Below are positions 19,761-61,975 of a stretch of 64,000 nucleotides of DNA, one piece after another (position 1 is the first letter of the stretch; each line of letters begins with the position of its first letter). Origin of the DNA: Selaginella moellendorffii (taxonomy: Eukaryota > Plantae > Lycopodiophyta); NCBI RefSeq assembly GCF_000143415.4, contig NW_003314289.1:29109-93108 (forward strand), in the 5' to 3' direction. Below the pieces are notes generated by a model. It did no database searches. It saw only the letters and a program-made list of their open reading frames with translations, and was not told the DNA's origin. Position numbers and translations under genes: made by a program.

Positions 19761-22494
19761 TCTCACAAGGTATTATCCTTATTTTGTTGAGGAATATGTG
19801 TCCCATGTACACTCCATCTAAACATATGTGAAATTGTGATGGGGCCAATTCAAAGGCACATTAGCTTTTATCCCCTGAATCATGTTTACACCTTTCCATA
19901 CTATCGATATATTTACAAGAGTTTGTGCCTTATAATCTCTAAGTGCCAAGGCTAAATATTTCACTAACTGAATTAAACATGAAGGTCCAAAACATGTCAC
20001 CAAGGATAACTATTGCCATTTTAAGTTTTATTATCAACACAGTAAATAAATATTTCACTTCCACCTTAAAGCAAGGCAATCATCTATGAGAAGACTTTCT
20101 TTTGGAAGCTAGGATCTACATGAAGCTCTATCTGTAAGCTAAAGGTCATGAAAGATCCGTTGTAAGTTGTTTTATTTGTGATTAATGTGAAAAATACTTT
20201 ATATTACACAATAATAGAGTGCTTAGCCACAGTTGCATCAAACAATGTTAGATGATTTCTTAATTCTCTTACTATTAAGAGTTGATCCCTCCACAACATT
20301 TAACAGATTGCAAGGTTGAGTTCACAAAGTTTTGGTGTTGAATAAAGAATTTTAAGCTAGATATGTGATCCATACAAGAGGATTAATGCTTATAGTTACT
20401 TCTTTAATTCTTCTTGATCTGAATAAAGTGGAACATAAAAAATATTTAATTTTGATCCTATTCCAATTCTAAAGGCTATACTACTTTTCAATGCACTCAA
20501 AATATAACAATCAAAACAATTTTTGCTATTTGGGTAGTACAATTTATATCTTTTAAATCCTTTAAGAGGCAAAATTCAAATGTAAACCTATTAAAGTAAG
20601 CTGTTATATTATAGTCTTAATAATAACTATCAAAAAGTTTATAAAAATTGATGTTCAAACAAAAAGATTACATTCTTTTAAATAGAGGTTTACATAGAAG
20701 CTCCTCAAATTAAGCATGTTTACAAATATACCTTCAGAATTTTACATTGCAAAAATGCCTTGGCCTTTTTATTCTCCTCTAAAGCTTTAGATATTTTAAA
20801 AGTAGTAATATAGCTAAAAATAATTTATATTATATAAATATTTATTTTCTTAGTAAACAAATTTTAATCACTTTAAGAAATTTCTAAATTTTTTCATTTT
20901 AAAGCTGCAATAAAGTTTAATTTAAAAATTATTATTAAATACTATTATTGAAAATTCATAATAAAATAATAATGAGATAAAGTGCTCAATATAGAATTAT
21001 TTCTATTAAAAACTATAAATAGTTTTTTAAATAATTCTCAAAGTCTGATATGTTAATTTATTAGTGAATTACACCTAATAATTGATCAATAATTATGTTA
21101 AATTATTATTTATCTAAATAAAAACTATATACTAAAATATTTACATATAATAAAACATGCTTCTCATTAAGTGCATCATTTTATATTGCTACTAAAATTA
21201 AAATAAGTAATGAATATTAAAAACTAAAATTTTGGTATAAATTATTTTATGAGTCATAGCAAATGATAATATTACAAATTTTATGTATAGGCCACCTAAA
21301 AAAATATTATTACATTTTTCTTTGTGTTTAATGATGCCTAAGACAACTACATACTTTAACTTAATCTAGACTTTTATCCTTTTAGTCTTTAGTTTTGAAT
21401 ACTCTTATTTATTTTACCAATGCACTAACATTTTACTATATAAAATTTTAAAAGGATAGGGAGGTTGTAGAATTTTTGTAAACATAGAAAGTTCATGTTA
21501 ACTATATTATTTTTCAATATAAAATCATGGTTTGCCATTAAACAAGTATATTTAATAAAATTAAGAATTGAAAAATATTACTAATATGGTGCTGGATGGA
21601 AGGAAATATAAATAAACTATTGTATAGTGTATAGAGAAATAAAAAAAATATTAAAAAATCCTTTGAACTTAAAAATTCTGATAATGTGTAAAACATCACT
21701 ATGAGAAAGTAGTAAGAACACATTAATAACATTGTAATCATTTTAAGCTAATAAACCTCCTCTGAATTAGCAAGAACTCCATTTCTTTATTTTCTACTTA
21801 TCTTTAGTGTCTAGAGTATGCTTATAGTCATCCCTTATGTGAGTAATCAAATAGTTTTATTAAGATATCACTATTTCATTACAAATTTGATAAAAATATG
21901 TTAAAATTACATTATAAAACTTCAAATGTAAAATGATTACTAGTCATTTCTTAAGTTATAAGATTAAATCTTAACAAAAACATATTTTCAGATATTACAG
22001 TTTTTTCTAACATAAATAAAAAAGGTAAAAATCCTTTTGTATTATTTAAAATGGTTTCACCTATAAAATACAAAATTTTGTTAGTCATTAGTAGAATGTA
22101 CTAATATAATAATTTGTTATGCTTTGCATACAGCAATGTTTGGTTTTCTTAATAGTAGTGTTTTCCTATTTATTAATTCATTTGATCCAATGGAGATTTA
22201 TAATCATAAGCATGTTTATAATTTATAAACAACTTGTGTTTTTCCTTGTGTTTGAAGGGATTGATTTTGGTTGTAGTGCACCACCTTCACTTCCACCACT
22301 TTGCCCTAATCTTTGAGTTGGAAAATTTTGGCAAATGTAGACACAAAAGTTTCTCCTTATAGAGAACTAGGGAATAATTTTCAAAAAAATAAGGGTTTTC
22401 TTTTTACATTTATCCACTAATATATAAATGTCAAATGACATTATGATTAACATTTTAAAAAGAATAATCCCACCTTGGCTCATTTTAAACCACC

Positions 22495-57894: not shown

Positions 57895-59418
57895 CTACAA
57901 CCAAGGAGGAAGTCCTTTCCCCTCCTCCCTGAACCCTGCCTGAGTCCTGTAAGATAGCTTATAGCTATGTGTGTTTTTCCTGTCCTGTGTGTCCTCCCTG
58001 ATAGACGAGTTTAAAGCCTGGAGAGCCTCGTTGCGAGCGCTGCTTCTGCCGCACTCGCTCTCCCCCCGTCGCTCACCACATCTCGCAGGGTAGAACATCG
58101 TCAATCTCATCCGAGCTCGAGTACCACTCCTCGATATCCCAGCCATCGTCTGAGTAGTGCACGTCGGACATGTCGTCGTACAGGTCGAGCATCTGGAACT
58201 GGTCATTGAACTTGATGTTGTAGATGACTCTGATCTTCCGGCACCGCTCCGCCATGGCCCCGTCGATCGTCAAGTTCATGCAGCCCCTCAGATCGAGAAA
58301 GTCTAGGCTCTTGCACTTGTCCAGTATCGCGGCCAGCCCCGAGTTCGTGAGCGATCCGTAGCAGAGCTCGAGGTGTCTCAGCAGCGGCATGTGTGCGGCG
58401 ATGGCCAGCGCCTCGTCGTCATACTCCTCGGCCACCAAGTTGTTGGTCTGGAAGAAAAAGGACATGTTGCGGTCGAGGCGCGCGAGCGACTTGCAGGAGC
58501 GGCCGATCTGCGCGAGCGCCGTCTTGGAGATCGCTGTGCAGCCGCTGATGTCCAAGTGAGTTATCCTGCTCAAGCTGGGGGCGATGTTGGCAATGCAGCC
58601 GTCCGTGACTTGGCAGAATGGTATGCGAAGAACTTTCAACCCATGACCCCTGCAAGGCCAAAGAATGTATAGAAAACCATTCATGTCAATAGCATCCAGG
58701 CCCTGGCAGAGAGAAGTTTCTTTAAAAACCATTGCTGGTTCCTACAAAACCATGCAAATTCCATGCAAAGCGACTCAAACGAACCAGGAAGAGGTCAGGG
58801 CCGTTTGCTTGTATCTCACCGGGAAGCGTTATCTATGCAATGAGCAATCGGACTAAAGAAAAATCAACGCCAGAGACCTAACGGAATTTGGTTTTTTGCG
58901 AGACAATCACTAGCAAAGCAAAGAGCAAAGAAACAAGCTAAAGAAACCCAAGAACACACAAGAACACACAAGTCAATGAAAGAAGAGAGGAGAAAAAGAA
59001 AGAACCTCTTGGCGATGTAATCCACTGGCTCGTCGTTGGCGAGCCGACAGACCGAGAGCTCCTCGAGGCCGCCTCCGCTGCGCTCCACAACGAGCTGGAC
59101 CATCCTGTGGATTACCTCCCAGGGCATGAGCCGGCTCCATTCGTGCAAATCCACAACCCTCCAGCACGTCGGATCCATCGCCGCCTTGCGCCACGCCTTG
59201 CAAACCACGGGGACGCTCCGCATTCGCTCCTCGAGCGGAAGAACAGCGAAAATCCTGGCCAGGGCTTCCGGCAGCATCTCCGACCACTGCGCCGCGACGC
59301 CCCCATCGCTGACGCTCGGTGCTAGCAGCGCCGAGGAGGAGCCGCCGCTGCAAATTTCAGCGCTGCCGCGCTCCATCTCCATCTCCACCTCCATTGGCAT
59401 TGCCATCGCCATCGCCAT
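57895..59418 (-). CDS. F-box/LRR protein, FBW2/SKIP1-like
   Basis: F-box WSEMLPEALARIFAVLP...VPVVCKAW...PTCWRVVDL, then RNM...DDEALAIAAHMPLLRHLEL...LDLRGC and an acidic tail. The CDS either stops at 58073 or, via a TG|GTGAGC donor, has a last exon 57946-57895 ending GLPPWL. Confidence 0.85.
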
Positions 59419-59573
59419 CGCCACGACACGATGTAAGCGGGGGATCAGCTTTACACAGGGAGACTTAAAAGAAGAGTGTCCTTAACCTTCCACGTCACCA
59501 TCAGACGTGGACCATCTGGACACGTGGACGGTCGTGGGCATTCTGCTAGGGCTTTCTTAGGGTTCTTGGGGGA
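59419..59573. promoter_or_regulatory. Very short bidirectional promoter between the F-box and sirtuin genes
   Basis: 155 bp between divergent ATGs. Contains G-box CACGTG (59521), ACGT cores at ~59491 and ~59505, and a TAGGGTT telo-box-like motif. Confidence 0.55.
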
Positions 59574-60750
59574 ATGGAGCTCGACGAGGCGCTGCGCAAG
59601 GCCGCCGATCTCATCGTCAATGCGTCCTCGGTGGTGGCGTTCACTGGCGCTGGAATTTCGGTGGAATCCGGTAAGAATGCGGCGATCTAGCTCACAATGC
59701 GGGTTATTTCATTCGTCTTAGATGGCGCATTGCTCAATGCTTGTTTCGAGAGGGATTTTTCTAACAATGAATTGCCGCCAGGAATTCCGGATTTTCGAAG
59801 CAGCGGGGGATTGTGGTCAAAGTATGATCCCGAGGTGTATTGTAACTATTCTGTTTTCAAACAAAAGTAAGCGCTGGAGAAAAGAAGTTTTACTTTCTAG
59901 CTTCTTCTCTAACATTTTTTTTTTTGTTTGCTTTTCTGTTCAGGCCCGAGCTCTTTTGGAAGATGGCAGTGGACATGCAAAGCACAATGGCAGAAGCTCA
60001 GCCCAATCCCGCGCACTATGCGCTTGCCGAGCTTGAAAGTATGGGATATTTGAAACATGTTATAACGCAGAATGTAGATAACTTGCACCAGGTACTTGGG
60101 ATCATCTCTCTCCTTTTCTCTTTCTCTATTTTGCTTCTCGTATCCGACCAATTGGGAAATCTTTGTAGCGTGCAGGGAGCAACAAAGTACGTGAGCTGCA
60201 CGGGAATGGATCAACTGCGTCGTGCATGGCTTGTAGGAGCAAGGTACCAATCTCGGAGGCGATGGATCAGTTGAACTCCGGAAAAGTAAAAACAAACTTG
60301 TCTCTTTTTTTCCCAGCTTTTTCTTACACTGTACATTTGCAGAGTGTTCCGGTGTGCTCTCGTTGTGGAGGAGTTTTAAGAATGGACGCGATCCTCTTTG
60401 GCGAGCCTTTACAAAGTTCTGTGATGGAAGGCTCGCTACGATTGGCAATGTTTGCGGAGGTGATGCTTGTGATCGGAACTTCTCTTGTGGTAGGCACCAT
60501 GGATGCTTTTGTGTTGTTTGAGCTGAACTTCTCATTTCATGTTTTCGTTTTTTCGTCCGAGCAGGTCTCGCCCGCCAACAGCCTCGTGCAGCTCTGCAAA
60601 TCCAACCAAGGAACAATTGTCATTTGTGATCCCAGCCCTGCCAATTCTCATTTGGCTCATGTAATGCTGCGCGGAAACGCAGGCGAGGTGTTGCCTCGCC
60701 TTGTGCAAGCATGCAAAGCGCTGAGAACTAAAGGCAAGGCTCAGATGTAA
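59574..60750 (+). CDS. NAD-dependent deacylase (Sir2/sirtuin), compact class U/III-like, six exons
   Basis: The spliced frame reads MELDEALRKAADLI...[30 protein letters not shown]..|[35 protein letters not shown]..CMAC|..CSRCGGVLRMDAILFGEPL..VIGTSLV|VSPAN. Introns are GT-AG. Confidence 0.92.
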
Positions 60751-61975
60751 GAAGCCGGAAGAAAAAAAGGTTCTTTTTTACACAGACGTTCCGTCCTTTA
60801 TGTTTTTCTTGCTAATGATTTGTCCCACAGTGGAAGTCAGAGGGGATGCGTAAAGTAAACGCGGTCCAAACCGGACTAAAGCAAAAGCCGTGACGAGACC
60901 TTTCAAAGACAAAGTTTACTATGCAAAGTTCCATCAATCATACATGCAGGTAAGATAGTTTACTTGGGGCTTTTTTTTTCCAAACTAATCTTGTTTAGTT
61001 CCTTGTGTGTTGTTATTGACAGCATGTGTGATTCAGGCACACATCAAATCGCCAGAGACTGTCAACACCGGACAATCTCCTAGAGCAATACAAACAATGG
61101 AAAAAGGAAAGCTTGGAGTAAGCAATCGCGTTTGGAATCTCTCCTGATGATTTGACAAGGTTGAGAGAGAATTTGATTTTATTTGCATGGTCTGTAGACA
61201 ATGTGGAAAAATCTCTGGTCCCTTGGTACGCCCACTTACAAAGTGAAGTATCTGAACGTGCTGCTTTTTCACCCCACTATGCTATCCGCTATTCCTATTG
61301 TTAATCTCTTGAATTTATTGTTTTACTAGTCAAAATATAAATTTGGTTTTAAAGAGGTAGTGGCCTTTTAGCTAAAACTCGAAACACTACCTTTTTCCTC
61401 TTAACTAATGTTGTCGTTCATTCATTGTTCATCCTGGGGGTCGATCGTTTCCAGGGACAAAAAGTGATCAATCAAAATGCATCTAAGAAGTAGACAAACC
61501 CTAAAAAAAGATCTCGATTGGAGGCCACTATAGGAAGTAACAGTGACAAGAAAATCAATTTGCACCCCTATATAAAAAGGCAGTAGAAATAAAATAAAGG
61601 TAGTTTATAATTGCACGTTTTACATACCGTACGCGCAACTGAAGGGCGGCGGCCCAGCCACGTCAGCGCACACCCGCGAAGAAGAACCCTAATTTCTCAG
61701 TGCCAGTGCGTGGCCAGGAGCCGCCATATCCACAGCGGCACGCTGCGCGTAGAATTTAGGGTTGTAGGGTTCCACATTGGGACTGGGAGAGCGCTGGGAG
61801 TCTCATCTCTAAGGTGAGAATTTCTAGCTCGATCTGGCCTTGACAGGAGATTCGTTGACCTCTGTTTTTTTTTTGTGTGCCAGCTGCGAGCCTTGGAAAT
61901 CGCGTTTCTACATTTTGCCTGTTCGTCACGCACCAGTGGAGCTCTCGCTTTCGTTGAGCGCTCTTCGGTGGAGTG

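What the first reader, a model, noticed from the sequence alone, without database searches (positions are those of the whole stretch)
59574..60750. A third kind of plant sirtuin: minimal, prokaryote/protist-like Sir2 with spliceosomal introns
Established: angiosperms carry SRT1 (class IV) and SRT2 (class II). Seen: this ~260-aa protein is only the catalytic core, with no transit peptide or extensions. Its motifs [50 protein letters not shown], ELHG, two CxxC and FGEPL resemble, from recall, archaeal/bacterial class U/III and some protist sirtuins rather than SRT1/SRT2. The class III Tyr/Arg desuccinylase pair is not evident (FWKMAVDMQ). Five canonical introns show it is a genuine nuclear gene. 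Inference: an ancient lineage lost in seed plants or a domesticated horizontal transfer, implying an uncharacterised NAD-dependent deacylation activity.
Basis: partly seen in the sequence, partly recalled or inferred. Interest (0 to 1): 0.7.

Follow-up and report, generated by a model that had tools for sequence, protein, structure and literature searches.

The report
Known archaeal-type sirtuin gene of spikemoss
This is a real, intact six-exon Selaginella gene for a small NAD-dependent protein deacylase of the archaeal Sir2-Af2 type, which non-seed plants and green algae share; it is already annotated and was listed as SmoSRTb in a 2017 survey, so it is interesting but not new.

Summary
At 59574-60750(+) there are six exons and five GT-AG introns encoding a 259-aa core-only sirtuin with every catalytic motif.

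The product is 100% identical to Selaginella moellendorffii SELMODRAFT_271141 (XP_002975483.1). It is neither SRT1 (SIRT6-like) nor SRT2 (SIRT4-like). Its closest solved relative is archaeal Sir2-Af2 (220 bits end to end, TM 0.86-0.92), and it lacks the Tyr/Arg desuccinylase pair (A69, M72).

Orthologs occur in ferns, lycophytes, mosses, charophytes and a prasinophyte. No seed plant appeared among the best hits. Four of the five intron positions match in Selaginella, Diphasiastrum, Ceratodon and Klebsormidium. The green clade (100/99) groups with Entamoeba, Phalansterium and other protists (99/99). This favours ancient vertical descent with later loss over a recent horizontal transfer.

It is not new. 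Uhrig et al. 2017 (PMC5499015) list this gene as SmoSRTb and state that monocots and dicots lack the class I and III sirtuins that other photosynthetic eukaryotes keep.

The scan already found this gene's allelic copy on another scaffold of the same genome (s1-353494), and that reading agrees with mine.

Expression in Selaginella could not be tested, and no plant member has been studied biochemically.

The parts
59574..60750 (+). Whole gene from start codon to stop codon: SELMODRAFT_271141 / LOC9630608 / SmoSRTb, 6 exons, 259 aa
   Evidence: Searches give the model. One search shows 100% identity to P0159. Searches show the same 1177-nt span on GL377593.1. Searches give the name SmoSRTb.
59574..59670 (+). 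Exon 1 (aa 1-32 plus 1 nt). Holds the NAD-binding GAGIS motif at codons 25-29 (59646-59660).
   Evidence: One search matches NF040867 positions 2-25. G25, A26, G27 and S29 are invariant in 75 sequences.
59782..59866 (+). Exon 2 (85 nt, entered in phase 1): IPDFRS...WSKYDP and the cofactor-binding loop
   Evidence: This exon is 85 nt in all four species examined.
59944..60091 (+). Exon 3 (148 nt). A69 (59966-59968) and M72 (59975-59977) stand where class III desuccinylases have Tyr and Arg. TQNVD is at 60065-60079.
   Evidence: This exon is 148 nt in all four species.
60169..60285 (+). Exon 4: catalytic His121 (60199-60201) in ELHG; first zinc pair C129 (60223-60225) and C132 (60232-60234)
   Evidence: H121 is conserved in 74 of 75 sequences, C129 in 75 of 75 and C132 in 73 of 75.
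60343..60489 (+). Exon 5: second zinc pair C154 (60355-60357) and C157 (60364-60366); FGE substrate loop (F168-E170); GTS (G194-S196)
60565..60750 (+). Exon 6: VSPAN strand, D220 (60628-60630) where nearly all relatives have Asn, C-terminal helix, stop codon TAA
59671..59781 (+). Intron 1 (111 nt, GT-AG, phase 1). Its position is shared with Diphasiastrum, Ceratodon and Klebsormidium.
   Evidence: alignment column 134 in all four
59867..59943 (+). Intron 2 (77 nt, GT-AG, phase 2), position shared
   Evidence: column 163
60092..60168 (+). Intron 3 (77 nt, GT-AG, phase 0), position shared
   Evidence: column 213
60286..60342 (+). Intron 4 (57 nt, GT-AG, phase 0). It lies in a variable loop: same phase, but the position is only approximately shared.
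   Evidence: columns 251-259
60490..60564 (+). Intron 5 (75 nt, GT-AG, phase 0), position shared
   Evidence: column 311

Best explanation
The locus is the Selaginella moellendorffii gene SELMODRAFT_271141 (SmoSRTb). It is an intact nuclear gene for a 259-aa sirtuin that consists only of the catalytic core. The protein belongs to the archaeal/bacterial Sir2-Af2 branch of class III in the broad sense.

Shown: it has the Rossmann NAD-binding motifs, the catalytic His121, the four-cysteine zinc module and the FGE substrate loop. A very confident model superposes on Sir2-Af2.

Inferred mechanism: it binds NAD+ and an acyl-lysine peptide, releases nicotinamide, and transfers the acyl group to ADP-ribose through the His121-assisted imidate intermediate, as in other sirtuins. 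Ala and Met stand where SIRT5, CobB and Af1 have Tyr and Arg. It should therefore act on uncharged acyl groups (acetyl, propionyl, butyryl, perhaps long fatty acyl, as measured for Sir2-Af2) and not on succinyl or malonyl. With no targeting peptide it is probably cytosolic.

Evolution: the gene with its introns was already present in the common ancestor of Klebsormidium and land plants, and probably at the base of the green lineage. It belongs to a clade shared with Amoebozoa and other protists. It appears to have been lost in seed plants.
For: - Gene model and identity.
- Family: Pfam SIR2 170.8 bits. NCBIfam NF001753 scores 264 bits against a cutoff of 243.
- Closest solved structure: Sir2-Af2 219.8 bits end to end, then Af1 183, Sir2Tm 159, PfSir2A 149, SIRT5 115, SIRT4 106, SIRT3 100 and SIRT6 91.
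- Model: pLDDT 96.2, pTM 0.92. Best folds are Sir2Af2 chains at TM 0.86-0.92 and 43% identity.
- Catalytic and zinc residues are conserved across 75 relatives. The Tyr/Arg positions are A69 and M72.
- Sir2-Af2 biochemistry: deacetylates, depropionylates, debutyrylates and demyristoylates, with no desuccinylation (PMC4253809).
- Orthologs in Ceratopteris, Adiantum, Pteridium, Diphasiastrum, Ceratodon, Sphagnum, Closterium, Klebsormidium, Mesotaenium and Cymbomonas.
- Five introns with the same phases, and four at identical alignment columns, in four species.
- Careful ML tree: green clade 100/99; green plus protists 99/99.
- Eukaryote monophyly against all prokaryotes is not rejected, p-AU 0.29.
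- The second haplotype copy differs by 5 synonymous and 1 non-synonymous change in 780 nt, while introns differ about twice as much.
- Predicted cytosolic (supplement of PMC5499015).
Against: - No enzyme assay exists for any plant member.
- Acyl preference cannot be read from sequence beyond the Tyr/Arg rule. Ringel et al. say so themselves.
- Land-plant members carry Asp at residue 220, where 55 of the 58 relatives outside the green clade have Asn. This could alter NAD handling.
- The equivalog model NF040867 is not reached (287 bits against 320).
- The tree has no SRT1, SRT2, SIRT1-7, Af1, Af2 or Sir2Tm rows. Only E. coli CobB served as outgroup, so class placement rests on PDB score ranking.
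- One archaeal MAG protein (P0364) falls inside the eukaryote-containing clade.
- Absence from seed plants rests on the best 120 hits of two searches and on the 2017 paper, not on genome scans.
Confidence: 0.85

Rival explanations
1. A horizontally acquired prokaryotic sirtuin: a bacterial or archaeal Af2-type gene entered an ancestor of the green lineage and later gained introns.
For: The nearest non-eukaryotic relatives are prokaryotic 'NAD-dependent deacylases' at 44-50% identity: Asgard archaea, Actinomycetota and Deltaproteobacteria. An archaeal MAG protein, P0364, sits within the eukaryote-containing clade. No animal, fungal or seed-plant member was seen.
Against: The green clade groups with Entamoeba, Phalansterium and an MMETSP protist at 99/99, not with any one prokaryotic group. 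The prokaryotic sister is unresolved. Branching within the green clade roughly follows the species tree. Intron positions are shared back to Klebsormidium. Any transfer would therefore predate green-lineage diversification and cannot be told apart from ancient inheritance with these data.
Confidence: 0.1
2. A SIRT5/CobB-type class III desuccinylase/demalonylase, the usual meaning of 'class III' in eukaryotes.
For: Published surveys file the extra non-seed-plant sirtuins under class III or 'SIRT5'. SIRT5 is a clear though weaker PDB match at 115 bits.
Against: The Tyr and Arg that bind the acyl carboxylate are Ala69 and Met72. Across the green clade these positions are A/S/V and M/L/I. Af2, which also lacks the pair, has no detectable desuccinylase activity. 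Af2 scores about twice as high as SIRT5.
Confidence: 0.03
3. An assembly contaminant, or a decaying, unexpressed pseudogene.
For: Prokaryote-like sequence. No transcript evidence from Selaginella was obtained here.
Against: Five canonical spliceosomal introns. A plant F-box gene lies head to head 150 bp upstream. The same gene pair is on the second haplotype scaffold, with 5 synonymous to 1 non-synonymous difference. The reading frame is intact and all catalytic residues are kept. Fern and Sphagnum orthologs occur as uninterrupted ORFs on roughly 1-kb transcript-like contigs.
Confidence: 0.02

Closest known systems
Sir2-Af2 of Archaeoglobus fulgidus (PDB 1MA3, 1S7G, 1YC2, 4TWJ)
   Same: Same size and core-only architecture. 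The two align end to end (query residues 4-253 with Af2 residues 2-251, 219.8 bits) at 43% identity, and the model superposes at TM 0.86-0.92. The catalytic His, zinc cysteines and NAD motifs are the same. Small or hydrophobic residues replace the Tyr/Arg pair in both (S/M in Af2, A/M here).
   Different: The gene is eukaryotic and nuclear, with five introns. The NCBIfam equivalog cutoff is not reached. The green clade has Cys at positions 53 and 209 and Ser at position 200 (VSPAN where most prokaryotes have VYPAA). Land plants have Asp220 in place of Asn. Activity is untested.
SmoSRTb / the 'Class III SRT KDACs' of non-angiosperm photosynthetic eukaryotes (Uhrig et al. 2017, PMC5499015)
   Same: It is this very gene: identifier 271141, 259 aa, predicted cytosolic. 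The paper already states that monocots and dicots lack class I and III SRTs, and that S. moellendorffii and P. patens have enlarged SRT families.
   Different: The figure is not held, so the class drawn for SmoSRTb could not be read. In the text I could read, I found no mention of the Af2-type affinity, the missing Tyr/Arg pair, the conserved introns or the link to Amoebozoa.
Arabidopsis SRT1 (class IV, SIRT6-like) and SRT2 (class II, SIRT4-like)
   Same: Same Sir2 fold and presumably the same NAD-dependent deacylation chemistry.
   Different: Far lower similarity: SIRT6 chains score about 91 bits and a SIRT4 chain 106 bits, against 220 for Af2. There is no C-terminal extension as in SRT1 and no mitochondrial presequence as in SRT2. 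No seed-plant ortholog was seen.
Human SIRT5 / E. coli CobB / Sir2-Af1 (class III desuccinylases)
   Same: Same broad class III/U neighbourhood. Af1 is the second-best solved match at 183 bits.
   Different: It lacks the Tyr/Arg pair that gives specificity for acidic acyl groups. In the tree CobB is a long outgroup branch.
Entamoeba histolytica 'NAD-dependent deacetylase 1' and the Phalansterium / MMETSP protist homologs
   Same: They fall in the same clade as the green-lineage proteins, supported at 99/99.
   Different: They share 32-48% identity with the Selaginella protein (A2). The Entamoeba protein is longer, at 356 aa. I read nothing about their function here.

Membership tests
Sir2 / sirtuin family (Pfam PF02146) | SIR2 domain above the Pfam gathering score | tested here: met
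   170.8 bits against a cutoff of 24, covering residues 25-201 and profile positions 1-180 of 180. Exons 3, 4 and 5 each pass alone.
Sir2 / sirtuin family (Pfam PF02146) | NAD-binding motifs GAGxS and TQNxD, and the catalytic His of the HG motif | tested here: met
   G25, A26, G27, S29, T102, Q103, N104 and D106 are invariant in 75 sequences. H121 is present in 74 of 75.
Sir2 / sirtuin family (Pfam PF02146) | Four-cysteine zinc module (two CxxC) | tested here: met
   C129, C132, C154 and C157 are present, and conserved in all 17 green-clade sequences.
Sir2 / sirtuin family (Pfam PF02146) | Rossmann domain plus small zinc domain fold | tested here: met
   AlphaFold model with pLDDT 96.2. The top 50 PDB matches are all sirtuins, at TM up to 0.92.
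Sir2 / sirtuin family (Pfam PF02146) | NAD-dependent lysine deacylase activity | not testable with these tools
   Needs a recombinant enzyme assay.
Sir2-Af2-type prokaryotic deacylases (NCBIfam NF001753 subfamily / NF040867 equivalog) | Score above the curated NCBIfam cutoff | tested here: inconclusive
   NF001753 subfamily: 264 bits against 243, met. NF040867 equivalog: 287.2 bits against 320, not met. The same pattern holds for the fern, moss and charophyte orthologs.
Sir2-Af2-type prokaryotic deacylases (NCBIfam NF001753 subfamily / NF040867 equivalog) | Best full-length match to Sir2-Af2 among solved sirtuins | tested here: met
   Af2 scores 219.8 bits against 183 for the next best. The Foldseek top five are Af2 chains.
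Class III desuccinylase/demalonylase type (SIRT5, CobB, Sir2-Af1) | Tyr and Arg (SIRT5 Y102/R105, Af1 Y64/R67) that bind the acyl carboxylate | tested here: not met
   These positions are A69 and M72 in the alignment to Af1. In the green clade they are A/S/V and M/L/I.
Plant SRT1 (class IV) / SRT2 (class II) | Closest similarity to SIRT6/7 or SIRT4 respectively, and grouping with them in a tree | tested here: not met
   SIRT6 scores about 91 bits and SIRT4 (5oj7) 106 bits, against 220 for Af2. The tree part was not tested, because no SRT1 or SRT2 sequence was available by reference.
Defence-associated SIR2 NADases (DSR, Thoeris ThsA, SIR2-HerA, pAgo-SIR2) | Match to PADLOC SIR2 defence models | tested here: not met
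   Only two marginal local hits: 17.8 bits (residues 79-112) and 12.5 bits (residues 78-117).

The most novel reading that the evidence does not exclude
The Af2-type sirtuin of green plants, Amoebozoa and other protists may be a distinct, largely overlooked pan-eukaryotic sirtuin lineage. On this reading it descends from the archaeal (possibly Asgard-like) ancestor of eukaryotes and was lost independently in animals, fungi and seed plants. The plant branch would have its own regulatory features: clade-specific cysteines at positions 53 and 209, and an Asn-to-Asp change at residue 220 on the land-plant stem. It would act as a cytosolic remover of hydrophobic acyl groups, for which seed plants have no counterpart.
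Probability: 0.2. Interest if true: 0.5.

Novelty: already known. Interest (0 to 1): 0.3.

Why it matters
Plant sirtuin biology rests almost wholly on Arabidopsis and rice SRT1 and SRT2. This locus shows that ferns, lycophytes, mosses and streptophyte algae keep an extra, archaeal-type deacylase that no one has assayed. It is a defined target for asking which acyl marks were regulated in early land plants, and why the enzyme became dispensable in seed plants. The gene and the broad pattern are already published, so what this report adds is detail: the Af2 type, the missing Tyr/Arg pair, the conserved introns and the protist relatives.

Tried and rejected
- **Joined model.** I searched the spliced model exon by exon, by reference. 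The joined product was built only inside scripts from window coordinates and compared locally with fetched proteins. I did not send a typed joined protein to any search tool. Once one search showed that database protein P0159 is identical, I used that id.
- **Exon queries.** I did not send exon pieces to the search for homologous proteins. Its length window would have hidden full-length relatives.
- **Literature.** Searches for plant-specific work on this clade found nothing beyond Uhrig 2017 and a 2013 table.
- **Tree run.** The first careful tree run was killed by the sandbox. The rerun finished.
- **Asgard sister.** An Asgard sister group was considered because Heimdall and Hodarchaeales proteins are among the best prokaryotic hits. 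The tree leaves the prokaryotic sister unresolved.
- **Archaeal contig.** The Atlas look-up for the archaeal contig carrying P0364 gave only 'Archaea'.
- **Defence-type SIR2.** Rejected.
- **Contaminant or pseudogene.** Rejected.

Full report
**1. The observation**

The region 58800-61500 was read directly. By-eye exon boundaries were refined in scripts. The final model has six exons:

| Exon | Coordinates |
|---|---|
| 1 | 59574-59670 |
| 2 | 59782-59866 |
| 3 | 59944-60091 |
| 4 | 60169-60285 |
| 5 | 60343-60489 |
| 6 | 60565-60750 |

- The five introns are 111, 77, 77, 57 and 75 nt long, and all are GT-AG.
- The CDS is 780 nt and the product is 259 aa.
- Exons 3, 4 and 5 each pass Pfam SIR2 on their own.
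- All six exons hit NCBIfam NF040867 in order, at profile positions 2-25, 27-52, 55-103, 104-140, 144-191 and 192-241 of 242.
- I joined the exons only inside scripts. No typed joined protein went to a search tool.

**2. Identity of the gene**

- A search of 1.8 billion cluster representatives with exon 3 alone returned full-length relatives. The best, P0005, then served as query by reference.
- One of its hits, P0159, is 100% identical to my spliced model over 259/259 residues (local blastp).
- P0159 is SELMODRAFT_271141 of Selaginella moellendorffii (EFJ23112.1, XP_002975483.1, LOC9630608; UniRef 'Deacetylase sirtuin-type domain-containing protein').
- The deposited gene call lies on GL377593.1 at 88682-89858. 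It spans the same 1177 nt as the finding, and the DNA is identical.
- From that point I used P0159 as the reference for the whole protein.

**3. What kind of sirtuin it is**

- Pfam SIR2 scores 170.8 bits over residues 25-201.
- The ranking against all PDB chains is:

| Solved sirtuin | Bits |
|---|---|
| Sir2-Af2 (residues 4-253 on 2-251 of 253) | 219.8 |
| Sir2-Af1 | 183 |
| Sir2Tm | 159 |
| PfSir2A | 149 |
| SIRT5 | 115 |
| Xenopus SIRT4 | 106 |
| SIRT3 | 100 |
| yeast Sir2 | 92 |
| SIRT6 | 91 |

- It is therefore not of the SRT1 (SIRT6-like) or SRT2 (SIRT4-like) kind.
- NCBIfam passes the NF001753 subfamily cutoff (264 against 243) but not the NF040867 equivalog cutoff (287 against 320). 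The fern, moss and charophyte orthologs behave the same way.
- An AlphaFold model built from a 75-sequence alignment has pLDDT 96.2 and pTM 0.92. Its best structural matches are Sir2Af2 chains (TM 0.86-0.92, 43% identity), then Af1, Sir2Tm, PfSir2A and SIRT5.
- In the alignment to Af1, the Tyr and Arg that bind succinyl (Af1 Y64/R67, SIRT5 Y102/R105) correspond to A69 and M72. Across the green clade these positions are A/S/V and M/L/I.
- Ringel et al. 2014 (PMC4253809) showed that this pair sets the preference for acidic acyl groups. They also showed that Sir2-Af2, which lacks the pair, removes acetyl, propionyl, butyryl and myristoyl groups, the last 3.4-fold faster than acetyl, and has no detectable desuccinylase activity. 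They caution that long-chain preference cannot be predicted from sequence.
- PADLOC defence-type SIR2 models do not match.

**4. Distribution and history**

- Named orthologs at 50-61% identity come from:
  - ferns: Ceratopteris, Adiantum and Pteridium;
  - the lycophyte Diphasiastrum;
  - mosses: Ceratodon and several Sphagnum species;
  - charophytes: Closterium, Klebsormidium ('putative sirtuin') and Mesotaenium;
  - the prasinophyte Cymbomonas.
- No seed plant, Marchantia or Physcomitrium protein appears among the best 120 hits of the searches with the Selaginella and fern-like queries.
- That tool only sees proteins 0.55-1.75 times the query length, so fusions and fragments are not excluded.
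- Below the plants come prokaryotic 'NAD-dependent deacylases' at 44-50% identity. They include Heimdall-, Hod- and Thorarchaeota, Actinomycetota and Deltaproteobacteria.
- I fetched the genomic loci of three orthologs and threaded each protein through its DNA.
- Selaginella, Diphasiastrum, Ceratodon and Klebsormidium all have six exons and five introns with phases 1, 2, 0, 0, 0. Exon 2 is 85 nt and exon 3 is 148 nt in all four.
- Introns 1, 2, 3 and 5 fall in identical alignment columns. Intron 4 lies in a gappy loop.
- The gene and its introns therefore predate the split of Klebsormidiophyceae from the land-plant line.
- A careful ML tree (68 rows, LG+C20 PMSF, E. coli CobB as outgroup) gives three results:
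  - the green clade is supported at 100/99;
  - the green clade joins Entamoeba histolytica 'NAD-dependent deacetylase 1', Phalansterium, an MMETSP protist and several roughly 1-kb metatranscriptome contigs at 99/99;
  - the prokaryotic sister group is unresolved.
- A quicker 101-row tree agreed.
- One member of the larger clade, P0364, sits on a 26-kb archaeal contig next to PolD genes. A tree holding the known eukaryotes together against all prokaryotes, P0364 included, is not rejected (p-AU 0.29).
- This pattern fits an old eukaryotic gene with many losses better than a transfer into plants. It cannot exclude a very early transfer.

**5. Is it functional in Selaginella?**

- Indirect evidence favours a working gene:
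  - the frame is intact and every catalytic residue is kept;
  - the second haplotype scaffold (GL377603.1; SELMODRAFT_228577 / LOC9658995) carries the same gene beside the same F-box neighbour;
  - that copy differs by 6 of 780 exon bases, 5 synonymous and 1 A131V, against 6 of 397 intron bases plus a 4-nt indel;
  - a fern-like ortholog is an uninterrupted 265-aa ORF on a 1270-nt Logan contig of SRR8210169, which is most simply a spliced mRNA;
  - Pteridium and Sphagnum members likewise come from transcriptome-type contigs.

**6. Comparison with the literature**

- Uhrig et al. 2017 (BMC Genomics, PMC5499015) surveyed acetylation enzymes in photosynthetic eukaryotes.
- Their supplementary table lists 'SmoSRTb 271141', 259 aa, consensus localisation 'Cyto'.
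[quoted passage not shown] It also says that S. moellendorffii and P. patens have enlarged SRT families.
- Costantini et al. 2013 (PMC3599600) already tabulated a SIRT5-type entry for Physcomitrella, and also one for rice, which I could not check.
[quoted passage not shown] 'Class III' in the 2017 survey is thus compatible with the Af2 type found here.
- The figure of the 2017 paper is not held, so I could not read which class it draws SmoSRTb in.
- I found no paper that assays or knocks out a plant member.
- The scan noted the allelic copy on the other scaffold earlier (s1-353494). That follow-up reading (archaeal Sir2-Af2 type, shared by green algae, mosses, lycophytes and ferns, no seed-plant copy) agrees with what I tested independently.

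**7. Verdict**

- It is wrong about novelty. The gene is annotated and was published as SmoSRTb, and the pattern of extra sirtuin classes outside angiosperms was described in 2017.
- This report adds four refinements: the Af2-type placement without the Tyr/Arg pair, the intron conservation back to Klebsormidium, the clade shared with Amoebozoa and other protists, and a few lineage-specific substitutions.
- Interest is modest, because it is an uncharacterised enzyme with a clear evolutionary loss. Novelty class: already known.

Noticed in passing
window 60628-60630 (codon 220): Land-plant members (mosses, lycophytes, ferns; 13 of 17 green-clade rows) have Asp where 55 of the 58 relatives outside the green clade have a near-invariant Asn in the strand after the Rossmann core. 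The charophytes and Cymbomonas keep Asn. From my own knowledge, this Asn contacts the NAD ribose in solved sirtuins, so the change might alter cofactor handling.
   Followed up: partly
window codons 53 (in exon 2) and 209 (in exon 6); alignment A2: The green clade has cysteines of its own: C53 in 17 of 17 rows and C209 in 16 of 17, where other relatives mostly have Ala. Position 99 is Cys in 15 of 17 green-clade rows but His in Selaginella. These could be redox-sensitive sites. Not examined.
   Followed up: no
window 58864-59424 (-): A first exon encoding an F-box-like domain (Pfam 25.2 bits) lies head to head with the sirtuin, about 150 bp from its start codon. The same gene pair is on the second haplotype scaffold (L088). 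Its N-terminus is an (Met-Ala)n run encoded by a GCCATC-type repeat near 59390-59425.
   Followed up: partly
L087:6001-6786 (P0364): An archaeal MAG protein, on a contig whose neighbouring genes encode PolD DP2, falls inside the 99/99 clade that otherwise holds green plants, Amoebozoa and protist-like transcripts. Its phylum could not be determined.
   Followed up: partly
L083:1501-4406 (Klebsormidium P0166); Closterium P0165, P0167 and P0464: The charophyte orthologs carry extensions that the land-plant proteins lack. Klebsormidium has about 100 extra N-terminal residues, and Closterium has a Gly-rich C-terminal tail. One Closterium model is 740 aa, possibly a fused gene call.
   Followed up: no
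searches: Physcomitrium patens and Marchantia polymorpha proteins are missing from the ortholog list, although Ceratodon and Sphagnum are present. This may mean further lineage-specific losses, or gaps in the database.
   Followed up: no
window 20001-22000: This 2-kb stretch has only 23% G+C, in a window that otherwise runs at 33-54%. Not examined.
   Followed up: no
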